Shown one piece after another: positions 20,991 through 38,693 of a stretch of DNA of 64,000 nt; positions within the stretch are counted from its first letter, which is position 1; each line of letters starts with the position of its first letter. The translations under genes and the position numbers were made by a program. The notes under the pieces are model-generated. The model had not been told where the DNA came from and did no database searches. It saw nothing but the letters and a program-made list of their open reading frames with translations. This DNA is from Gracilinanus agilis (Eukaryota). The DNA lies in the NCBI RefSeq assembly GCF_016433145.1, contig NC_058134.1, forward strand, positions 16,926,038 through 16,990,037, in the 5' to 3' direction.

Positions 20991-22036
20991 TTACTCCAAA
21001 GTGATTTTCTTAAAGAGCACATTGCTCTCCTATTCAGTTAACTCTAGTGGCTCCCTATTACCTCTAGATTCAAATACTATTTCATCTTTACCTCCTCCTT
21101 TTAAAGTATCTATTTTTTTGTATTTTTTTTGCATACCCAATTAGTAGTATGTTATTATATGTGTGTAATTTATAAGAAAATGGACAAGGTACAGTTAGGT
21201 GGCTCAGTGGTCAGAGAGCCAGGTCTAGAGATGGGAGGTCCTGGGTTCAAATCTGGATATATGATTCTGGGTAAGTCACTTAACTCCCATTGCTTAGCCT
21301 TTATAGCTCTTCTGCCTTGGAACCAATACACAGTACAGATTCTAAGCCAGAAGGGTTTTTTAAAAAATAGGTAAATGGACACACATTGGTGTATGTTTGT
21401 GCAAAAATGTTTTTCTGAGAAAAATGAGTGGAAACTCCTTGTTCAGAGAAGGGGAAAAACTAGAGCAAAATTATCCATGGAAGGAAAGGATGGATGTGGG
21501 AACTTGGTTGGGGGTGGTGGGAGAACTGCTTCCCTGTTGTCTCTGTCCTTTGTCATGAGATCCTTACAAGCCAATCCATTCAGCAAATATTTATAAGGCA
21601 GCTACTATGTGTCAGGCACTCTGCTAGGTGTTAAGCATACAGAGACAAAGCTGGACCAGTCCTTGCCCTCAAGGAGTATCCATTCTTTAAGGGGAAAGGA
21701 GAGAAATACTCTTTTGAAATGATTTCTTACATTTCAGTGAAATAGATATGGTTGTCTAAATGTGTTATTGAATTGAATTTCGAAGGAAATCCCACACATT
21801 TCCAAACGAAAACCCCAGTATTGCCTCATTCTAAAAATTATTTCTTTTTGGGTAGGCTGGCTCTGTGGGAAGAAATTTTCCCAGGCGTGTTGAGGGTTGG
21901 TGATTCACATCACTTTGCTTCTCTTTCTAGAGAGTTAGAACTCTGGCTCGTATCTTCTTTGGGGCAAGGAATTCTCTAGGCTTTCCAGGCTTCTTTGATG
22001 CTAAAACAAATCCCTCGGCTTGCCATGTCTTCCCAG

Positions 22037-22123
22037 GAGTTCGTGAGCGTCTGGGTCCGGGATCCTCGAATTCAGAAGGAAGACTTCTGGCACTCCTACG
22101 TTGACTATGAGATATTCATTCAT
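22037..22123 (+). CDS. SNX10: SNX10 coding exon 2 ([29 protein letters not shown]), start of PX domain
   Basis: cttcccAG acceptor, 87 nt, donor GTAAGT at 22124. Near-identical to human SNX10 residues 9-37. Confidence 0.97.
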
Positions 22124-28755: not shown

Positions 28756-28854
28756 ACAAGTGCCTGAACTGCCTTCCAAAAACCTGTTCTTCAACATCAA
28801 TAACCGAGAGCACGTGGACCAGCGGCGGCAAGGGCTGGAGGAATTTCTGAGGAA
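28756..28854 (+). CDS. SNX10: SNX10 coding exon 4 ([I]QVPELPSKNLFFNINNREHVDQRRQGLEEFLR[K])
   Basis: ttctgtccccccAG acceptor, 99 nt, donor GTAAGT at 28855. Phase 2 matches exon 3. Contains the PELPSK proline loop and the RRQGLEEFL helix of the PX domain. Confidence 0.97.
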
Positions 28855-29899
28855 GTAAGTGGCCGGGGGTCTTGGGGATGGTGTCTAAGGTGGGGGGGGG
28901 AACCTCTCCCGACTGTCCCTTGTGGCCAGGGCCTCTCGCTTGCTCTGGGTGTGCCTCCCCCCCTGGAGCCCAGTGCTTGGCACATCGTGTGCTCAATGAA
29001 TGTTTCCTGTGCAGGTGAGCCGAAAGTCTCAAGCCCAGCTCACAGGTAGGGACAGCCAGGTGGTTTGGTGAATGACTAGAGCCCCAGGCCTGGAGTCAGA
29101 AGGAGCTGGGTTCAAATTTGGCCTCGGACACTTCCTAACTGTGACTGGACAAATCACTTCACTCATCTGCCAGTTTCCCCAACTATAAAATGGAGAGGAA
29201 TAATAGTACCTCTAGGGGCAGCAAGCCAGGTGGCTCAGTGGATAGAGTTAGGTCTAGAGCCAGGTGAATCTGGGTTCAAATCTGACCTCAAACACTTCCT
29301 AGCTGTGAGACCCTGGGCAAGTCAATTAACCTCAATTGCTTAGTCCCTACTGCTCTTCTGTCTTAGAAGTGATACTANNNNNNNNNNNNNNNNNNNNNNN
29401 NNNNNNNNNNNNNNNNNNNNNNNNNNNNNNNNNNNNNNNNNNNNNNNNNNNNNNNNNNNNNNNNNNNNNNNNNNNNNNNNNNNNNNNNNNNNNNNNNNNN
29501 NNNNNNNAACCTATCAAGAACTTTACCAAGAAATCCTCTGAAGTCTCCAAGGACACAAGCCAGAAATTAGGGGCAGGCAGGCAGATTTAGAGCTGGAAGG
29601 GATGGGGAAACTGAGGCCATCTCAGGTTAAGCAGCAAACAGATAGTGTCCCAGTTGGGGGTTGAATGCAGCCTGGCCCCCACAGCTCCCCAAACTAAGGT
29701 CCTTGATGGCCCAGCTGCCTGTCTTTGCCTCAGCAGCCTCAGTGCCTACAGGGGGCCCGGGACGTTTTGGGGATTCATAAACTTTGATTGGATTAAGGAT
29801 GGTTTTACTGCAGGTCCCCTCCCTCGAGGGCCAGGCGGTGGCCTCCTTCTGGTCACGTGGGGGTTCCTGTTCTGGTTCTGGTTCTGAGTTTTTCCCAGC

Positions 29900-30700: not shown

Positions 30701-32690
30701 CTGCCTAGATGGGCTGTTTCCCCTGAAGCCTTCCCGCCCACCCCTGGCCCCGTTTGAGGCTGGGGGCTTCAGCTGTAATCTTCTGGAGGACCAGAGGCTG
30801 CCTCCCTGGCCTTGCCTTTCTCCAGGGACTGCCCGAGGCTTAGGTGGCGCCCCCTAATGGGAAGAGGGTCATGGCTACTTCTCCTTGGTCCATCTGTTAG
30901 AGTCTGTCTGGGTACTGCGCCCAGACCTCGCCACGTACTTCCATGTTCTTGGGCTCAGGGATCGCACCGTGGTTGCCCAGTCTTATTGCAGGGCAGAGCA
31001 GCCTGGGAGTCAGAGGATCTGGAATCGAACTCTGCCCTCAGATGCTTCTGGTTCCTTGGGTGACCTTGGTAAAGTCCCTTGAACTTCCGGTTCCTCGTAC
31101 TAGACAGCCTTAAAGACCCCTGGATTTCTGAGTCATTTGAATTTTTATGGAGAAGTAGCATTAGAGGAGATACTGTGTGTCCCTGGGCAAGTCACTTAAC
31201 TTTCTGAGCTTCAGGCAATTCCCCAGGATGAGAAATGACTGACTCTTCTTTGGCCTTCAGCCTCAGGGAAGGGAATGGTCCCAGAGGGACATGCCCCCAT
31301 CAGGGAAATGACAAAACTCCATTCAGTTGTTTTCAAGTCAACAAACATTAAGCTCCTTCTTGAAATGACCCCATTTCAGAGCTGGTGCTGACTGGCTTGT
31401 ACAGATGAGTGAGCTACAGTTTACACGGTTCAGATACTTTTTGTCATTTGAGGCTCACATCACCCCATTAGGTAGGGTTTCTGGACAAGATGACTCCCAT
31501 TTCACAGATGAGGAAACTGAGGTTCCCCTGAAGGAATTTGAAGTGACTTTCCCACAGTCCTACTGCAGGAAGTGCCAGAATTCTAAGTTTAACTCTTTTT
31601 GCTCCAGCCTCCTCCTGCCAAATAAGTCTTTATAAAGCGATGGGCCAGCAGTGGATAGAGCACTGGGCCTGGAATCAGGAAGATCTGAGTTCAAATCCAG
31701 CTTTAGATACTAGCTGTGCAGCCCACACAGCCTCTGCCTCAGTTTCCTCATCTGTAAAACAAGACAGAGAAGGAAATGGCAAGCCATTCCAGCATCTTTG
31801 GCAAGAAAAGCCCTAAAAGAGTCAACAGGAGTTGACCACAACTGAAAATGACTGAATTAATATAGTTTTATTTTAAAAATATTTTTCCATGGTTCCATGA
31901 TTCATGTTCTCTCCCTCCCCTCTTCCCTACCCCCTCCCAGAGCTGACAAGCAATTCCATGGGATTATACATTTTTTAATTTTAATTTTAATATTTTATTT
32001 TAAAAATATTTTGAAAATGACTAAGTTAAGAACTTTAGAAGACACAAAACACTACTAGCACAATGACCTCCTGATGAAAGGGTGGAATATTGAAAATATG
32101 ATGACATTCTTAACTTCCTGAATAGCTTTTGCATTATGATAGTGCCATTATTTCAAAACCTGTTGAGATCATTCTGACAGAAGAAAAGGGGCATTCCCTA
32201 GGTTTGAATTCTCCTGACTGGGGAAGCCAATTGCAAATCTCAGTTTCCTCATCTGTAAAATGGGGACGATTATGCCCATCCAGGAGCTGAGTCCCAAGAT
32301 TTTGGCAAACCTTCAAATACCATCTGAATAGCAGTGGTTGTCATTATTCCTATGTTTCTTCATAATGATTAGTCACTGAGTTTGCATTTTTTCAGTAAAA
32401 ATGATTGTCCTCCACGTGTCTAACTGGTGCAGGATGGCACGGTTTTTGTTTCTTCTGGTGATTAAATGTGAAAAAGATTTTGCTTTGTCATTTCTGCGAT
32501 GAGAAAGTTACAGAATGCATCAGCAAGAAATCTGCCCCGGTGGCCTCAGGTAACTTGCTTTTTTTGTTCCTAGTAGTCCTAATAGTCTGCATTGATGTAT
32601 AGTATAGGGTTTTAATGTTTCATCAAGCCCTTTTTAAGCCTGATCTACTAGCTGATATTGGCAGATAGTTCCTTAAGGGTGTCTTTAGCA

Positions 32691-32869
32691 ATTCTGACCA
32701 CGTTTGCTTGCTTTCTTGCATGGTTGCCTGTAAATGGACAGCGAATCTGTTGCTTTTTAGACGGCATAAGTCCAGTGGTTAATCTTCCTTTCTGTCCAAA
32801 AAGGCATCTATGATTGGGCCAGGTTCTAAGAGACTCTGGAAACCATGAGTCAATGTGAGAACAGACTGG
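32691..32869 (+). promoter_or_regulatory. Duplicated intronic module, copy 1 (NFAT:AP-1 composite at 32837-32852)
   Basis: About 85% identical by hand count to 33434-33610; contains TGGAAACCATGAGTCA. Confidence 0.7.
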
Positions 32870-33433
32870 TGTAGCTGAGTGATATGGGAATGAAGTGCTA
32901 GTGTTTTCCCTTTTTAGCAGATGAGGAAACTGAGGCAGAGGTGAAATGAGTTGCCTAGGTCACACTGCTAGTGTCTGAGGCTGGATTTGAATTCCGCTCT
33001 CCCTGACTCCAGATCTAGTGTTCTCTCTATCCACTGTCCCACCTCACTGCCTAATTTGGATGTCTGATATCATTTGGGAGGTGCAATTCTTATTAGCTCT
33101 GCTTTATAGATGAGGGAGTGGCAAAGAGAAACAGGGAGGGTTGAATTCAGAAATGGGCATCTGCCGCCAACCTTGCCTACCCTTAACATCTGTCGTTTTT
33201 TTCCCCTGTCAGAGTTTTGTTTGGTTTCTGTGGGTGAAGAGGCATATTATCCCTTTGAAACTAGTAGGGCCCTTCCTTACTTGTTGAATCCAGGCCCCCC
33301 ACTCGTGAACATTGGCAGCCCTGCCCAGCTCACCTCTTTGATTCAGAAGGCCCCCATAAAGCTTTTTCCCCTTTCCTAGCAGAAGTCTGTTCAATAGAGG
33401 GCACCAGAGCACAGATCATGGATGTTGTTAGTG

Positions 33434-33610
33434 ATTCTGACCAAGTTTGCTTGTTTTCTCGCATGGTTGCCTGTAAACAGACAGTCAATTTGTTGTTTTT
33501 TAGACAGCCTAAATCCAGTGGTTAACCTTCCCCCATCCAAAAAGGCATTTATGATTGGGCCAGGCTCCAAGAGTCACTGGAAACCATGAGTCAATGTGCG
33601 AACAGATTGG
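33434..33610 (+). promoter_or_regulatory. Duplicated intronic module, copy 2 (NFAT:AP-1 composite at 33578-33593)
   Basis: Same TGGAAACCATGAGTCA block as copy 1. Confidence 0.7.
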
Positions 33611-35499
33611 CGCGGCCGAGTCGTGTTTTCCATTAGAATTGTGTGTATATAAAGCACCTAATAAAATCACAGTGAGGAAAACCAGATTTTGTTACTCGGA
33701 CTAGTTTAAGGGGGGAAATGTATTTTGTCTCTGTACGGCTTAAACTTGGGAAGCAAAAGGAATGGCCCACATTTGGGGGCCTGACATTTCCCAGTGTCCC
33801 TAACTCGCTCCCCGAAAGCCATTCGCAAGGATGATTTCTAATGCCCGTGAGACGTGGCTTCCTAAAGCTTCCTGGCTGAGACAAGGATTACTTTTGATTC
33901 CTTCTGTAAGAGGGCTGCCCCTTAGCATTCAGGTTTACATGGATTTGGTAAGCAGGTTTGTTTAGAGCAGCCATTGTTTGTTGAAAATCTCCATTCCGTT
34001 GGAGAATTTGTTTGAGACGTTGGACTTTTAGATGAGATTCATTTATGGTCCCTATTAAATGTGAAGTAGTTAAGAAAAAGCCTTCCGCTTTCCCAGGAGT
34101 CTGTTTGCCATCCAGCACTCTGCTCAGGGGTTCCCTGCTCAGGGAATATGTTACTCATGCCCATGGGTGGTGGTTCTCTGCCTCCTCATACCATCATGTA
34201 TGTGTTTCTGGGTTGTAGCCTCTTTCCACTCAGAAGAATGGGAGCGCGTGGAGGCAGAAACTTTCTCATTTTGTCTTTGTATCCTCAGCATCTGGCACCC
34301 AGCAACAATTGCAGCTTATACTTGTTGGTTGCTAGGTTGAATGCATTCTTTCTGCCCCCTCCCTCTACCCCACTCCTTTGGAGAATTTGTTTGAGACTTT
34401 GGTTATATATATATATATAAAAATAATTTGGAGTCCCCATTAAGTGTTTAGCATTTTAAAAACATATGATCAGTTTAAAAAACAAATCAAAACCCTCCCC
34501 TTCCATCTTAGGATCAATCCTGTGTATCTGCTCTAAGGCAGAAGAGTATTAAGGACTAGGCAATGGGGGTGAAGTGACTTGCCCAGGGTCACCCAGCTAG
34601 GAAGGGTCTGAGGCCACATTTGAACCCAGGACCTCCAATCTCTGGCCCTGGTTCTCAATCCATTGAGTCACCCAGCTGCCCCCCATATTAGATTTTCTGA
34701 GGGTTCCCAATGTTATCCATTACTAGGTCACTTCCTATAGGACAACTTTATTCATCCCCATTGGTTAGTACCCTGTCTCTTCAACTGACCCTATGTTTAC
34801 AGCTCTGTTTTTGTGTGGTAGCCCTCTCTTCCACCCAGAATCATGTCAGCTTCCTGAAGGCAGGCAGTTTTTCTTTCTGGCTTTGTATCCTCAGTGCCTA
34901 ACACCCATGAATGATCCTGTTCCTTGGTTGATATTCTAACCCTTAGCCCTATCCCAGAAGAATGTTACTTCCTTGAAGTCAGGCAGTTTTTTTTTTATCG
35001 TTTTATAGCTCTAGAACTGTGATCTTGGTCACATTATAGATGGGGAAACTGAGGCAGGAAGGGAAGTGTCTTGTCCAAGGTCCCACAGGTAGTGACAGAG
35101 GTAGGATTTGAACTTCGACCCTCTGACTTCCAAAACCAGGACTCTTTCCACTGGATCACTTTGTCTTTGTATCCCCAGCACAATGGGTGGCACATAGGAA
35201 GTTCCTTCCTTGGATTGGATCCAGATTGCTTTATGGAAAGCTATGTGGCTGATATAAGATAGCAGGAGGAGAAAAATCAGAATCAAGCCTCTTAGGGGCT
35301 CTGCCTCTGCATGCACAAATTGAGGGAAGCCTGGCAGGCAGGACTGAGATGCACTGATGTCGCTGGACTCCTGGGCAATGCCCGGTTCCCTTTCTATGGT
35401 GATTCCTCTTGGGGATGACTTTTTTTTTTTTTCTTGAACTCACATAAAAGAAAGGAAGCCGATCTGTTTTTTTTTTTTTTTTTAATTTTAAATTTTACA

Positions 35500-36400
35500 A
35501 TGGCCCATCCTCGTACTTCAGGGCTGGCACAGTGCTCTCCAAAGCCAGCTTAGTGCCCAGAAGATGGAGCCGCATCAGGCTGCGTGGGATGCAGCTGCTT
35601 CCGAAAAATGCCCTCAGGGGGTTCCAGCATCCTTCCAGCATCCTTCCAGCATCCTTCCTCCTGGCCCGCCCCGCCCCGCCCCGCCTCACCCCGCCCTACC
35701 CTCCAGGCTTCGGAGGCTGCGGCAAGCTCCCTCCGCTTCCTCTCCGGGCCGCCCTCCAGGTGGCGCCGTTGAGCAGGAAAGAAGCCCCGGCCTAATGAAT
35801 CCAATGGAAAGTCAAATTGGAAATTGAATTATAGCCGGGGAGAAGGGACGGTAGCCTTGAGGTTGTGCTCGGCCCGGGCTCTCCGAGAGCTCGCTCGCTC
35901 GCTGCTCCCATGTGTTAGCTTGCTCGCGAGTTAATAACGGCGCCGGAGCAGTTCAAGGCTTGGGCGAATTGCTTTCGACATGAAATAAAGCCAAAATGAA
36001 TTTGTGTCCGATATCATTGACATTAGTGCTCATTACTTCTGGGGTGTAATGCCTCAAACCATCGGAAATCAATTTTAAAGATTGCCCATTATTTTATAAA
36101 GAAAATAAAATACATTTCCAACAGCAACAAAGCAGTAAGTACCAGCGCAGGGAGAGTTACTTATCCCCTCGGCCGCTTGGCTGGCTGGCTGGCGGTGGGG
36201 CCGGCAGGCGGGCTTCCTGCCTGGGCTGAAACTGGGCCCCCCCAACCCCCCCTCCCAGCTCAGCCCAGCCCAGCATCCCTGCCCGGCCCTTCCTCTCTGG
36301 AAATATTTAATGCTCCAGAGCTGTTTACAGATGTGGAAAGGAAACTGGAGGGGGCGAGCCTGAGGAGCCTGGCTGGGCTCTGATGGGGTTGAGCCACTTT
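35500..36400. promoter_or_regulatory. Intronic CpG island with Sp1-type boxes, CCAAT and a CTCF motif
   Basis: (CCCCG)n near 35665-35695, CCTCCAGGTGGCGC at 35753-35766, CCAAT near 35801. Confidence 0.7.
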
Positions 36401-38477: not shown

Positions 38478-38693
38478 GATCCTACAAAATGCCCTTTTGC
38501 TATCGGACAGCAGACTTCACCTCTTCTTACAGAGTCACTTAAGCTCTGAAGACATCGAGGCCTGTGTTTCTGGACAGACAAAATACTCTGTTTCTGAAGC
38601 GATTCAGAAGTTTGCTTCTTCCAACAGACGTTTCCCCAAAGAAGATGAAGAGGGGGGGAGAAAAGCCAATTCTATAGATTATGGCTCCACAAG
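38478..38693 (+). CDS. SNX10: SNX10 coding exon 5 (ILQNALLLSDSRLHLFLQSHLSSEDIEACVSGQTKYSVSEAIQKFASSNRRFPKEDEEGGRKANSIDYGST), end of PX plus extended PXe helices
   Basis: ttttaaatAG acceptor, 216 nt, donor GTAATT at 38694. Phase consistent with exon 4. Confidence 0.96.

What the first reader, a model, noticed from the sequence alone, without database searches (positions are those of the whole stretch)
32691..33610. Duplicated intronic module preserving an exact NFAT:AP-1 composite site in an osteoclast gene
Seen: two ~178-bp copies 743 bp apart, about 85% identical by hand count, share an invariant 22-bp block CTGGAAACCATGAGTCAATGTG plus ATGATTGGGCCAGG (CCAAT box). Known: TGGAAA-N3-TGAGTCA is the canonical NFAT:AP-1 composite spacing, NFATc1 with Fos/Jun is the master RANKL osteoclast programme, and SNX10 is RANKL-induced and mutated in osteopetrosis. 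Inference: a tandemly duplicated RANKL/calcium-responsive enhancer, possibly marsupial-specific in dosage.
Basis: partly seen in the sequence, partly recalled or inferred. Interest (0 to 1): 0.78.

Follow-up and report, generated by a model that had tools for sequence, protein, structure and literature searches.

The report
Opossum-only partial copy of ancient SNX10 switch
The two look-alike stretches are real: one is the middle of a non-coding element kept in this SNX10 intron from birds and lizards to mammals, the other is a partial copy made only in American opossums, and nothing shows that selection preserves the NFAT:AP-1 site they share.

Summary
Observation confirmed. There are two direct copies of about 205 bp (32677-32886 and 33420-33621), 83% identical. 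Both carry the exact 22-mer with TGGAAA-N3-TGAGTCA. They lie in the 9.6-kb SNX10 intron between the exons for residues 73-104 and 105-155. The window is Gracilinanus agilis.

The unit is not a transposon. Copy 2 is the interior of a conserved non-coding element found at the same place in this intron in six other marsupials, deer, echidna, quail and Anolis.

Copy 1 exists only in the two didelphid opossums (Gracilinanus, Monodelphis). It sits inside an old MIR SINE and replaces about 50 bp of it. That looks like a templated repair insertion, not a head-to-tail tandem duplication.

The AP-1 heptamer arose in marsupials; other amniotes read TTAGTTA there. The GGAAA half is older. The composite is intact in Gracilinanus (both copies), Monodelphis copy 1, devil and bilby. 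It is weakened in wombat and possum, half deleted in Dromiciops, and destroyed in Monodelphis copy 2.

The 22-bp identity is expected by chance (P = 0.42), and the motif evolves no more slowly than 15% of other windows of the unit.

An ancient regulatory element is likely. A RANKL/NFATc1 enhancer with doubled dosage is untested and weakly supported.

The parts
33420..33621 (+). Copy 2, the parental copy. It is the interior of the conserved intronic element and carries TGGAAACCATGAGTCA at 33578-33593 and ATTGG at 33552-33556.
   Evidence: Colinear single-copy orthologues in Dromiciops, devil, wombat, brushtail possum and bilby, and in deer, echidna, quail and Anolis.
32677..32886 (+). Copy 1, the daughter copy, found only in the didelphid opossums. 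It is inserted into a MIR SINE and carries the same composite at 32837-32852.
   Evidence: Present in Gracilinanus and Monodelphis only. It replaces about 50 bp of the MIR that is intact in Australidelphians. In the tree, the copy-1 pair (100/97) is sister to the copy-2 pair inside the didelphid clade (98/98).
32887..33050 (-). Old MIR-type SINE, reverse orientation. It is the target of the insertion and is shared with Dromiciops, wombat and possum.
   Evidence: Many diverged copies in the window. The orthologous, longer MIR is present in Australidelphians.
33051..33329 (.). Spacer between the MIR and the conserved element. It has no homology to the flanks of either copy.
   Evidence: Local alignments score no better than shuffles. 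It aligns to Dromiciops and wombat upstream of their single copy.
33330..34070 (.). Marsupial-wide conserved non-coding block. Its core, about 33380-33715, is conserved across amniotes. Deep anchors lie at 33386-33419 and 33655-33692, on either side of the duplicated part.
   Evidence: Within the block, about 6-33 of 40 columns are invariant in 7 marsupials (most 40-bp windows 10-25), against 1-6 of 40 beyond 34070. nhmmer E-values are 3e-21 (deer), 1e-18 (echidna), 2e-47 (quail) and 1e-39 (Anolis), all in the same intron. CpG o/e is 0.5-0.72 here against 0.06-0.2 around it. No conserved RNA structure and no Rfam hit.
28760..28855 (+). SNX10 exon piece (residues 73-104) that bounds the intron upstream.
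   Evidence: phmmer against PDB 4on3 Sorting nexin-10, E 1.3e-14.
38479..38631 (+). SNX10 exon piece (residues 105-155) that bounds the intron downstream.
   Evidence: phmmer against PDB 4on3 Sorting nexin-10, E 1.3e-22.

Best explanation
Copy 2 is the middle part of an ancient non-coding element that has sat in this SNX10 intron since before birds, lizards and mammals split. Conservation of that depth, without a reading frame or RNA structure, points to a DNA-level function. The most likely function is an enhancer, acting on SNX10 itself or on another gene of the neighbourhood; the HOXA landscape is one candidate. This step is inferred.

On the marsupial stem the interior of the element was remodelled. 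Two substitutions turned TTAGTTA into the AP-1 heptamer TGAGTCA, 3 bp downstream of an older GGAAA. That created an NFAT:AP-1-type composite. This step is shown.

Later, in the didelphid lineage after its split from Australidelphia and before the Gracilinanus-Monodelphis split, about 205 bp of that interior was copied into a MIR SINE about 540 bp upstream, with loss of about 50 bp of the MIR. The copy does not include the two deeply conserved anchors. The pattern fits templated synthesis from a nearby donor during double-strand-break repair. It does not fit unequal crossing-over or transposition. The pattern is shown; the repair mechanism is inferred.

The daughter copy then evolved at about the local background rate. 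It is most likely a nearly neutral passenger that happens to carry a second composite site. Whether either site binds NFAT and Fos/Jun is untested.
For: - Window identity and gene: the window is 100% identical to the Gracilinanus agilis SNX10 locus. The SNX10 exon pieces are confirmed.
- Copy number: two copies in Monodelphis; one in Dromiciops, two dasyurid assemblies, wombat, possum and bilby.
- Insertion site: copy 1 interrupts a MIR that is continuous in Australidelphians.
- Timing: the tree places the duplication inside the didelphid clade. Paralogue divergence is about 17% uncorrected, less than the roughly 26% between didelphid and Australidelphian orthologues.
- Conservation: a 7-marsupial conserved block, with significant hits in the same intron in deer, echidna, quail and Anolis.
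- Not RNA: no conserved RNA structure, no Rfam hit, and folding z-scores of -0.9 and -0.05.
- Rate: Gracilinanus-Monodelphis identity is 87.1% for copy 1 and 88.5% for copy 2, against 79-86% for the surrounding intron.
- Motif: the 22-mer run has P = 0.42. The motif window has 10 parsimony steps against a mean of 14.9, and 15% of windows are as low.
Against: - The composite is somewhat better kept than the unit average: 6 steps over 13 specified bases against 0.94 per column.
- In Monodelphis the site survives only in the daughter copy. That could mean selection for at least one site per genome rather than neutrality.
- GGAAA is enriched in 33560-33810 (5 seen, 1.15 expected) and several of these sites are conserved. 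This is compatible with an NFAT- or ETS-type input.
- A genome-wide search for further copies of the unit could not be run.
Confidence: 0.62

Rival explanations
1. Both copies are working NFAT:AP-1 (calcineurin- and RANKL-responsive) enhancer modules of SNX10, and the duplication raises inducible dosage in opossum osteoclasts.
For: - The composite has the spacing of the NFAT:AP-1 composite as I recall it and is intact in both Gracilinanus copies, in Monodelphis copy 1, in devil and in bilby.
- It lies inside a conserved element with extra conserved GGAAA sites.
- SNX10 is an osteoclast gene mutated in osteopetrosis (PMC8173195, PMC5462793).
Against: - The 22-mer identity is expected by chance.
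- The motif is lost in Monodelphis copy 2 and Dromiciops and weakened in wombat and possum.
- It is absent at the aligned place in deer, echidna, quail and Anolis, where the element is still conserved. The element's old function therefore does not depend on the composite.
- Copy 1 lacks the deeply conserved anchors and evolves at the background rate.
- No paper in the library reports NFATc1 control of SNX10 through such a site.
Confidence: 0.12
2. Site hand-over. The composite is functional, and after the duplication selection needs only one intact site per genome. This let Monodelphis lose it in the parental copy and keep it in the daughter copy.
For: - Monodelphis copy 2 has 3 changes in the 13 specified bases plus one in the spacer, while its copy 1 is intact.
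- The Monodelphis copy-2 branch is long (0.15 against 0.054 for Gracilinanus copy 2).
- In both opossums some deeply conserved positions keep the ancestral base in copy 1 only: 6 in Gracilinanus and 11 in Monodelphis.
Against: - Dromiciops has a single copy and lacks the GGAAA half.
- Retention of ancestral bases does not differ between deeply conserved and other columns in any copy (Fisher p 0.2-0.7).
- The pattern rests on two species.
Confidence: 0.13
3. The unit is a fragment of a dispersed repeat or an LTR pair, and the shared motifs are those of a transposon promoter.
For: Two direct copies flank about 540 bp. Copy 2 is followed by TATATAAAG and AATAAA, which at first sight looks LTR-like.
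Against: - Copy 2 and its downstream TATA/AATAAA stretch are orthologous and single-copy across amniotes.
- There are no inverted termini and no third copy in the window or in eleven other SNX10 loci.
- The sequence between the copies predates the duplication.
- No hits in the viral or metagenome collections.
Confidence: 0.03
4. The conserved element belongs to the long-range regulatory landscape of the neighbouring HOXA cluster, not to SNX10. SNX10 would be a bystander host, and the opossum duplicate would be irrelevant to osteoclasts.
For: - Conservation at amniote depth is typical of elements around developmental regulators (my own knowledge).
- In human cells the HOXA cluster loops to loci in SNX10 and SKAP2 (PMC7657955).
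- A distal HOXA control region lies beyond SNX10 (PMC10762089).
Against: - The cited loop anchors are at 10-kb resolution and the marked site is downstream of SNX10, not this intron.
- I did not check whether HOXA lies near SNX10 in Gracilinanus.
- There is no direct link to this element.
Confidence: 0.1

Closest known systems
NFAT:AP-1 composite elements (IL-2 ARRE-2 type; HOMER NFAT:AP1 motif)
   Same: GGAAA and TGAGTCA lie on the same strand, separated by 3 bp. The AP-1 half tolerates degeneracy in known sites, as in the wombat and possum variant TGAGGCA.
   Different: No binding or inducibility data. The site is lost or damaged in four of the nine marsupial copies (three independent events) and is absent outside marsupials. 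Matching the spacing to the known composite relies on my memory of ARRE-2 and the HOMER matrix; the one paper found lists only WGGAAA-TGASTCA (PMC1702496).
Deeply conserved non-coding elements in introns of bystander genes
   Same: About 300 bp alignable from quail and Anolis to mammals at the same intronic place, with no coding or RNA-structure signal.
   Different: The target gene and tissue are unknown. The marsupial interior is strongly remodelled relative to other amniotes.
Templated insertions (filler DNA copied from a nearby donor during end-joining repair)
   Same: A short donor in cis about 540 bp away, same orientation. The insertion comes with a deletion of about 50 bp at the target. 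No target-site duplication was seen at the MIR ends; the ends of copy 1 itself were not searched.
   Different: About 205 bp is long for typical filler. Junction microhomology could not be established after tens of millions of years of divergence.
Shadow or redundant enhancers born by local duplication
   Same: A second partial copy of a regulatory element within 1 kb of the first, with complementary loss of sites in Monodelphis.
   Different: The daughter copy lacks the most conserved anchors, and there is no evidence that it is active.

Membership tests
NFAT:AP-1 composite element | GGAAA core and TGASTCA-like heptamer on one strand with a 3-bp spacer | tested here: met
   GGAAACCATGAGTCA at 32838 and 33579.
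NFAT:AP-1 composite element | Kept by purifying selection in related species | tested here: inconclusive
   Intact in 5 of 9 marsupial copies; lost or weakened in 4. Parsimony load is in the lowest 15% of windows, which is not exceptional. Absent in deer, echidna, quail and Anolis.
NFAT:AP-1 composite element | Cooperative NFAT plus Fos/Jun binding and cyclosporin-sensitive induction | not testable with these tools
   No ChIP, ATAC or reporter data.
Transposable element or dispersed repeat | Many dispersed copies, and absence at the orthologous site in outgroups | tested here: not met
   Only two copies in 64 kb. Copy 2 is present at the orthologous site in 10 other species. A whole-genome copy count was not possible.
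Transposable element or dispersed repeat | Terminal structures (TIR, LTR ends, poly-A, target-site duplication) | tested here: not met
   No inverted termini in the unit. A target-site-duplication search was run only at the ends of the neighbouring MIR and found none; the ends of the unit itself were not searched. The flanks of the two copies are not homologous.
Head-to-tail tandem duplication (unequal crossing-over) | The repeat period includes the intervening sequence, and the spacer is duplicated with the unit | tested here: not met
   The spacer has no second copy. The MIR and spacer pre-exist as single sequences in Dromiciops, wombat and possum.
Conserved non-coding element | Orthologous position and conservation well above the neighbouring intron over deep divergence | tested here: met
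   Same intron in all species. Invariant columns drop from mostly 10-25 of 40 to 1-6 of 40 beyond 34070. E-values down to 2e-47 in quail.
Conserved non-coding element | No coding or structured-RNA explanation | tested here: met
   No Rfam hit. RNAalifold energy is -0.9 kcal/mol with no covarying pair. Gaps are not multiples of three. ORFs in the unit are not in the protein collection.
Templated repair insertion | Nearby donor, deletion at the target, no target-site duplication | tested here: met
   The donor is 540 bp downstream and about 50 bp of the MIR is replaced. No target-site duplication was seen at the MIR ends; the junctions of copy 1 were not searched separately.
Templated repair insertion | Microhomology at the junctions | tested here: inconclusive
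   Only GG-level matches at the 5' junction, and the junctions have diverged.

The most novel reading that the evidence does not exclude
The composite site is functional, and the opossum duplication allowed a hand-over: selection keeps at least one NFAT:AP-1 site per genome. Monodelphis would then have moved the working site from the ancient element to the daughter copy inside a MIR. This would be a dated example of binding-site relocation by templated repair within an amniote-wide conserved element.
Probability: 0.13. Interest if true: 0.55.

Novelty: new member of a known kind. Interest (0 to 1): 0.33.

Why it matters
The result replaces an attractive motif story with a dated history:
- The element is amniote-wide.
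- An AP-1 site was born in it on the marsupial stem.
- A partial copy was made only in American opossums, by a repair-type insertion into a SINE.

If the composite proved active, the locus would be a compact natural experiment on enhancer redundancy, with one copy in Australian marsupials, two in opossums, and the site surviving only in the daughter copy in Monodelphis. If it is not active, the case is a useful warning that exact motif identity between 83%-identical paralogues is expected by chance. The conserved element itself may deserve a look by people who study SNX10 or the HOXA neighbourhood. Whether it is already catalogued in eutherian resources was not checked here.

Tried and rejected
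No read depth or RNA evidence was obtained.
- The look-up of sequencing runs listed one holder and no RNA run.
- Exact-pattern scans of the viral collection and the metagenome collection found nothing. The search of earlier findings by sequence was blank.
- ORFs across the units are not in the protein collection, so a protein route to further copies was dropped.
- The search of protein representatives (ticket) was still queued after ten polls and was abandoned. SNX10 proteins were reached through the search for homologous proteins instead.
- P0006 (an isoform X2) was not on record.
- The LTR-pair idea was rejected: the TATA/AATAAA stretch after copy 2 is part of the amniote-conserved element.
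- snoRNA, miRNA or other structured RNA was rejected.
- A large tandem duplication was rejected.
- A test of constraint from retention of ancestral bases gave no signal.
- L001 turned out to be the window's own genome. I used it only to identify the species and did not read its letters opposite the window's N runs.
- No human sequence was fetched or compared, and the human SNX10 entry was left alone.
- The SNX10 exons were searched one by one by reference.

Full report
**1. What is there**

The repeat finder and a self-blastn show two direct copies, 32677-32880 and 33420-33621. The alignment is 204 nt at 83.3% identity, and the starts are 743/741 bp apart. The 22-mer CTGGAAACCATGAGTCAATGTG is exact in both and occurs nowhere else in the window, even with three mismatches. 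The block that contains ATGATTGGGCCAGG is also exact in both. A gapped local alignment and shuffling tests find no homology beyond the unit, either in the flanks or in the sequence between the copies. Between the copies, 32887-33050 is a reverse-oriented MIR-type SINE with many diverged relatives in the window. A profile built from the two copies finds no third copy in the 64 kb.

**2. Gene and genome**

Short peptide motifs located SNX10 exon pieces on the + strand. Three pieces were searched one by one by reference and hit PDB Sorting nexin-10:
- 22028-22123, residues 7-37, E 6e-15
- 28760-28855, residues 73-104, E 1.3e-14
- 38479-38631, residues 105-155, E 1.3e-22

The finding therefore lies in the 9.6-kb intron between residues 104 and 105.

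The SNX10 locus of Gracilinanus agilis (L001) is 100% identical to the window, so the window is that species. I did not read L001 opposite the window's N runs.

**3. Is the exact 22-mer evidence of selection? No.**

The core has 168 identities in 202 columns. Permuting the differences gives an exact run of 22 or more in 42% of trials. Differences between the copies are transition-rich (25 transitions, 7 transversions), which is what neutral decay looks like. GGAAANNNTGAGTCA is expected 0.01 times per window. One ancestral occurrence is therefore a 1% event per window. That is unremarkable for a scan of thousands of windows and many motifs.

**4. Comparative evidence**

I reached marsupial SNX10 proteins through an exon-containing ORF. 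From these I fetched the gene loci of:
- Monodelphis (L002), Dromiciops (L003), two dasyurid assemblies (L004, L005)
- wombat (L006), brushtail possum (L007), bilby (L008)
- echidna (L009), red deer (L010), quail (L011), Anolis (L012)

The two-copy profile finds two copies in Monodelphis and exactly one in every Australidelphian. That single copy is always colinear with the window's copy 2.

A seven-marsupial alignment shows a conserved block at about 33330-34070. Most 40-bp windows in it have 10-25 invariant columns (range about 6-33), with a peak of 33 at 33386-33425. Beyond 34070 only 1-6 of 40 columns are invariant.

A profile of that block hits the same intron in:

| Species | E-value |
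|---|---|
| Deer | 3e-21 |
| Echidna | 1e-18 |
| Quail | 2e-47 |
| Anolis | 1e-39 |

Copy 2 is therefore the interior of an amniote-wide conserved non-coding element. The deepest conservation lies in two anchors, 33386-33419 and 33655-33692. They flank the duplicated part and were not duplicated. There is no Rfam hit, no unusual folding and no conserved RNA structure. The raised CpG retention over 33400-34100 fits a constrained or unmethylated element.

**5. How copy 1 arose**

In Dromiciops, wombat and possum the MIR upstream of the element is continuous. In Gracilinanus and Monodelphis about 50 bp of that MIR is replaced by the copy of about 205-210 bp. The MIR and the spacer are therefore older than the duplication and were not duplicated with it.

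A maximum-likelihood tree puts (Gracilinanus copy 1, Monodelphis copy 1; support 100/97) as sister to (Gracilinanus copy 2, Monodelphis copy 2; 89/87). Both pairs sit within a didelphid clade (98/98), and all Australidelphians fall outside it.

So the copy was made once, after the didelphid-Australidelphian split and before the Gracilinanus-Monodelphis split. A short donor in cis, the same orientation, a deletion at the target and no target-site duplication seen nearby (at the MIR ends only) together fit templated synthesis during double-strand-break repair. They do not fit unequal crossing-over or transposition. The mechanism is inferred; the pattern is shown.

**6. History of the composite site**

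| Lineage or copy | Sequence at the aligned place | State |
|---|---|---|
| Quail, Anolis | GGAAATCTTTAGTTAGG | GGAAA present, no AP-1 heptamer |
| Echidna | GGAAATCTTTAGGTAGG | GGAAA present, no AP-1 heptamer |
| Deer | GGGCATCCTTAGTTAGG | neither half |
| Bilby | TGGAAATCATGAGTCA | intact |
| Devil | spacer TTA | intact |
| Didelphid copies except Monodelphis copy 2 | spacer CCA | intact |
| Wombat, possum | TGAGGCA (one shared change) | AP-1 half weakened |
| Dromiciops | 9-bp deletion removes the GG | NFAT half lost |
| Monodelphis copy 2 | TGGAAGCCCCGAGCCA | both halves lost |

The GGAAA half is old and the AP-1 heptamer is a marsupial novelty.

On the marsupial tree the 16-column motif window has 10 parsimony steps. 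The mean over all 16-column windows of the unit is 14.9, and 15% of windows are as low or lower. The motif is a little better kept than average, but not exceptionally so.

The CCAAT box is didelphid-only; Australidelphians read TATTAG.

GGAAA is enriched in 33560-33810 (5 seen, 1.15 expected). The sites at 33627, 33676 and 33787 are kept in 5-7 of 7 marsupials. This is compatible with NFAT, but equally with ETS or other GGAA readers.

**7. Constraint on the daughter copy**

Gracilinanus-Monodelphis identity by segment:

| Segment | Identity |
|---|---|
| Copy 1 | 87.1%, no indels |
| Copy 2 | 88.5% |
| Surrounding intron | 79-86% |
| MIR | 95.9% |

Retention of the Australidelphian-consensus base does not differ between deeply conserved columns and marsupial-only columns in any of the four didelphid copies (about 80-90% in every class; Fisher p 0.2-0.7). 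In both opossums a few deeply conserved positions keep the ancestral base only in copy 1. An example is TGTAAATGG, which copy 2 has lost. Such complementary retention is suggestive but not significant.

**8. Literature**

Reviews and primary papers on SNX10 in osteoclasts describe its role in trafficking, fusion and osteopetrosis, and effects of SNX10 on NFATc1 protein. None describes an NFATc1-bound enhancer or promoter site in SNX10. In human leukaemia cells the HOXA cluster loops to loci in SNX10 and SKAP2 (PMC7657955). A distal HOXA control region lies beyond SNX10 (PMC10762089). An element this deeply conserved could therefore serve a gene other than SNX10. That is a lead, not a result.

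**9. Verdict**

The site is intronic in SNX10, the composite has the right spacing, and the unit is not a transposon. However:
- the duplication is a didelphid-only partial copy made by a repair-type insertion, not a tandem enhancer doubling common to marsupials;
- the exact site identity is what chance gives;
- the site has been lost repeatedly;
- RANKL/NFATc1 responsiveness is untested.

The best-supported reading is an ancient cis-regulatory element of unknown input, with a probably near-neutral opossum-specific daughter copy.

**10. Limits**

I had no read depth, RNA, chromatin or whole-genome copy count. No human sequence was used. Matching the spacing to known NFAT:AP-1 composites rests on my own knowledge of ARRE-2 and the HOMER matrix, not on a tool result.

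Noticed in passing
window 35214-35255: An ORF ending ...IGSRLLYGKLCG* matches the alternative C-terminus of Monodelphis SNX10 isoform X3 (...TIGSRLLYGRLCG*). This suggests an alternative terminal exon in the same intron, about 1.6 kb downstream of copy 2, which would truncate the PX protein after residue 104.
   Followed up: partly
window 35400-36100: A CpG-island-like patch inside the intron (GC up to 0.64, CpG o/e 0.54-1.07), just after the putative alternative terminal exon. It could be an internal promoter or another regulatory element.
   Followed up: no
window 33386-33419 and 33655-33692: Two near-invariant anchors, TTCAATAGAGGGCACCA... and CCTAATAAAATCA...GAAAACCAGATTTT, are conserved from quail and Anolis to marsupials. 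I could not assign the first to a known factor. The second resembles a posterior-HOX/PBX-type site followed by a GGAAAA site; that reading is from memory only.
   Followed up: partly
window 32887-33050: The MIR remnant next to copy 1 is 95.9% identical between Gracilinanus and Monodelphis. That is higher than either copy of the unit or the surrounding intron (79-86%). The sample is small and the result is unexplained.
   Followed up: no
L002 about 21097-21312 (Monodelphis), opposite window 32603-32606: Monodelphis carries an extra SINE-like insertion of about 215 bp just upstream of copy 1 that Gracilinanus lacks.
   Followed up: no
window 33460-33480 versus 32730-32745: The amniote-conserved TGTAAATGG is kept in the daughter copy of both opossums but changed to TGTAAACAG in the parental copy. 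Wombat and possum have also lost it.
   Followed up: partly
window 3796-4300 and 5200-5750: Long CT-rich simple-repeat tracts, seen as repetitive ORF translations.
   Followed up: no
   Followed up: no
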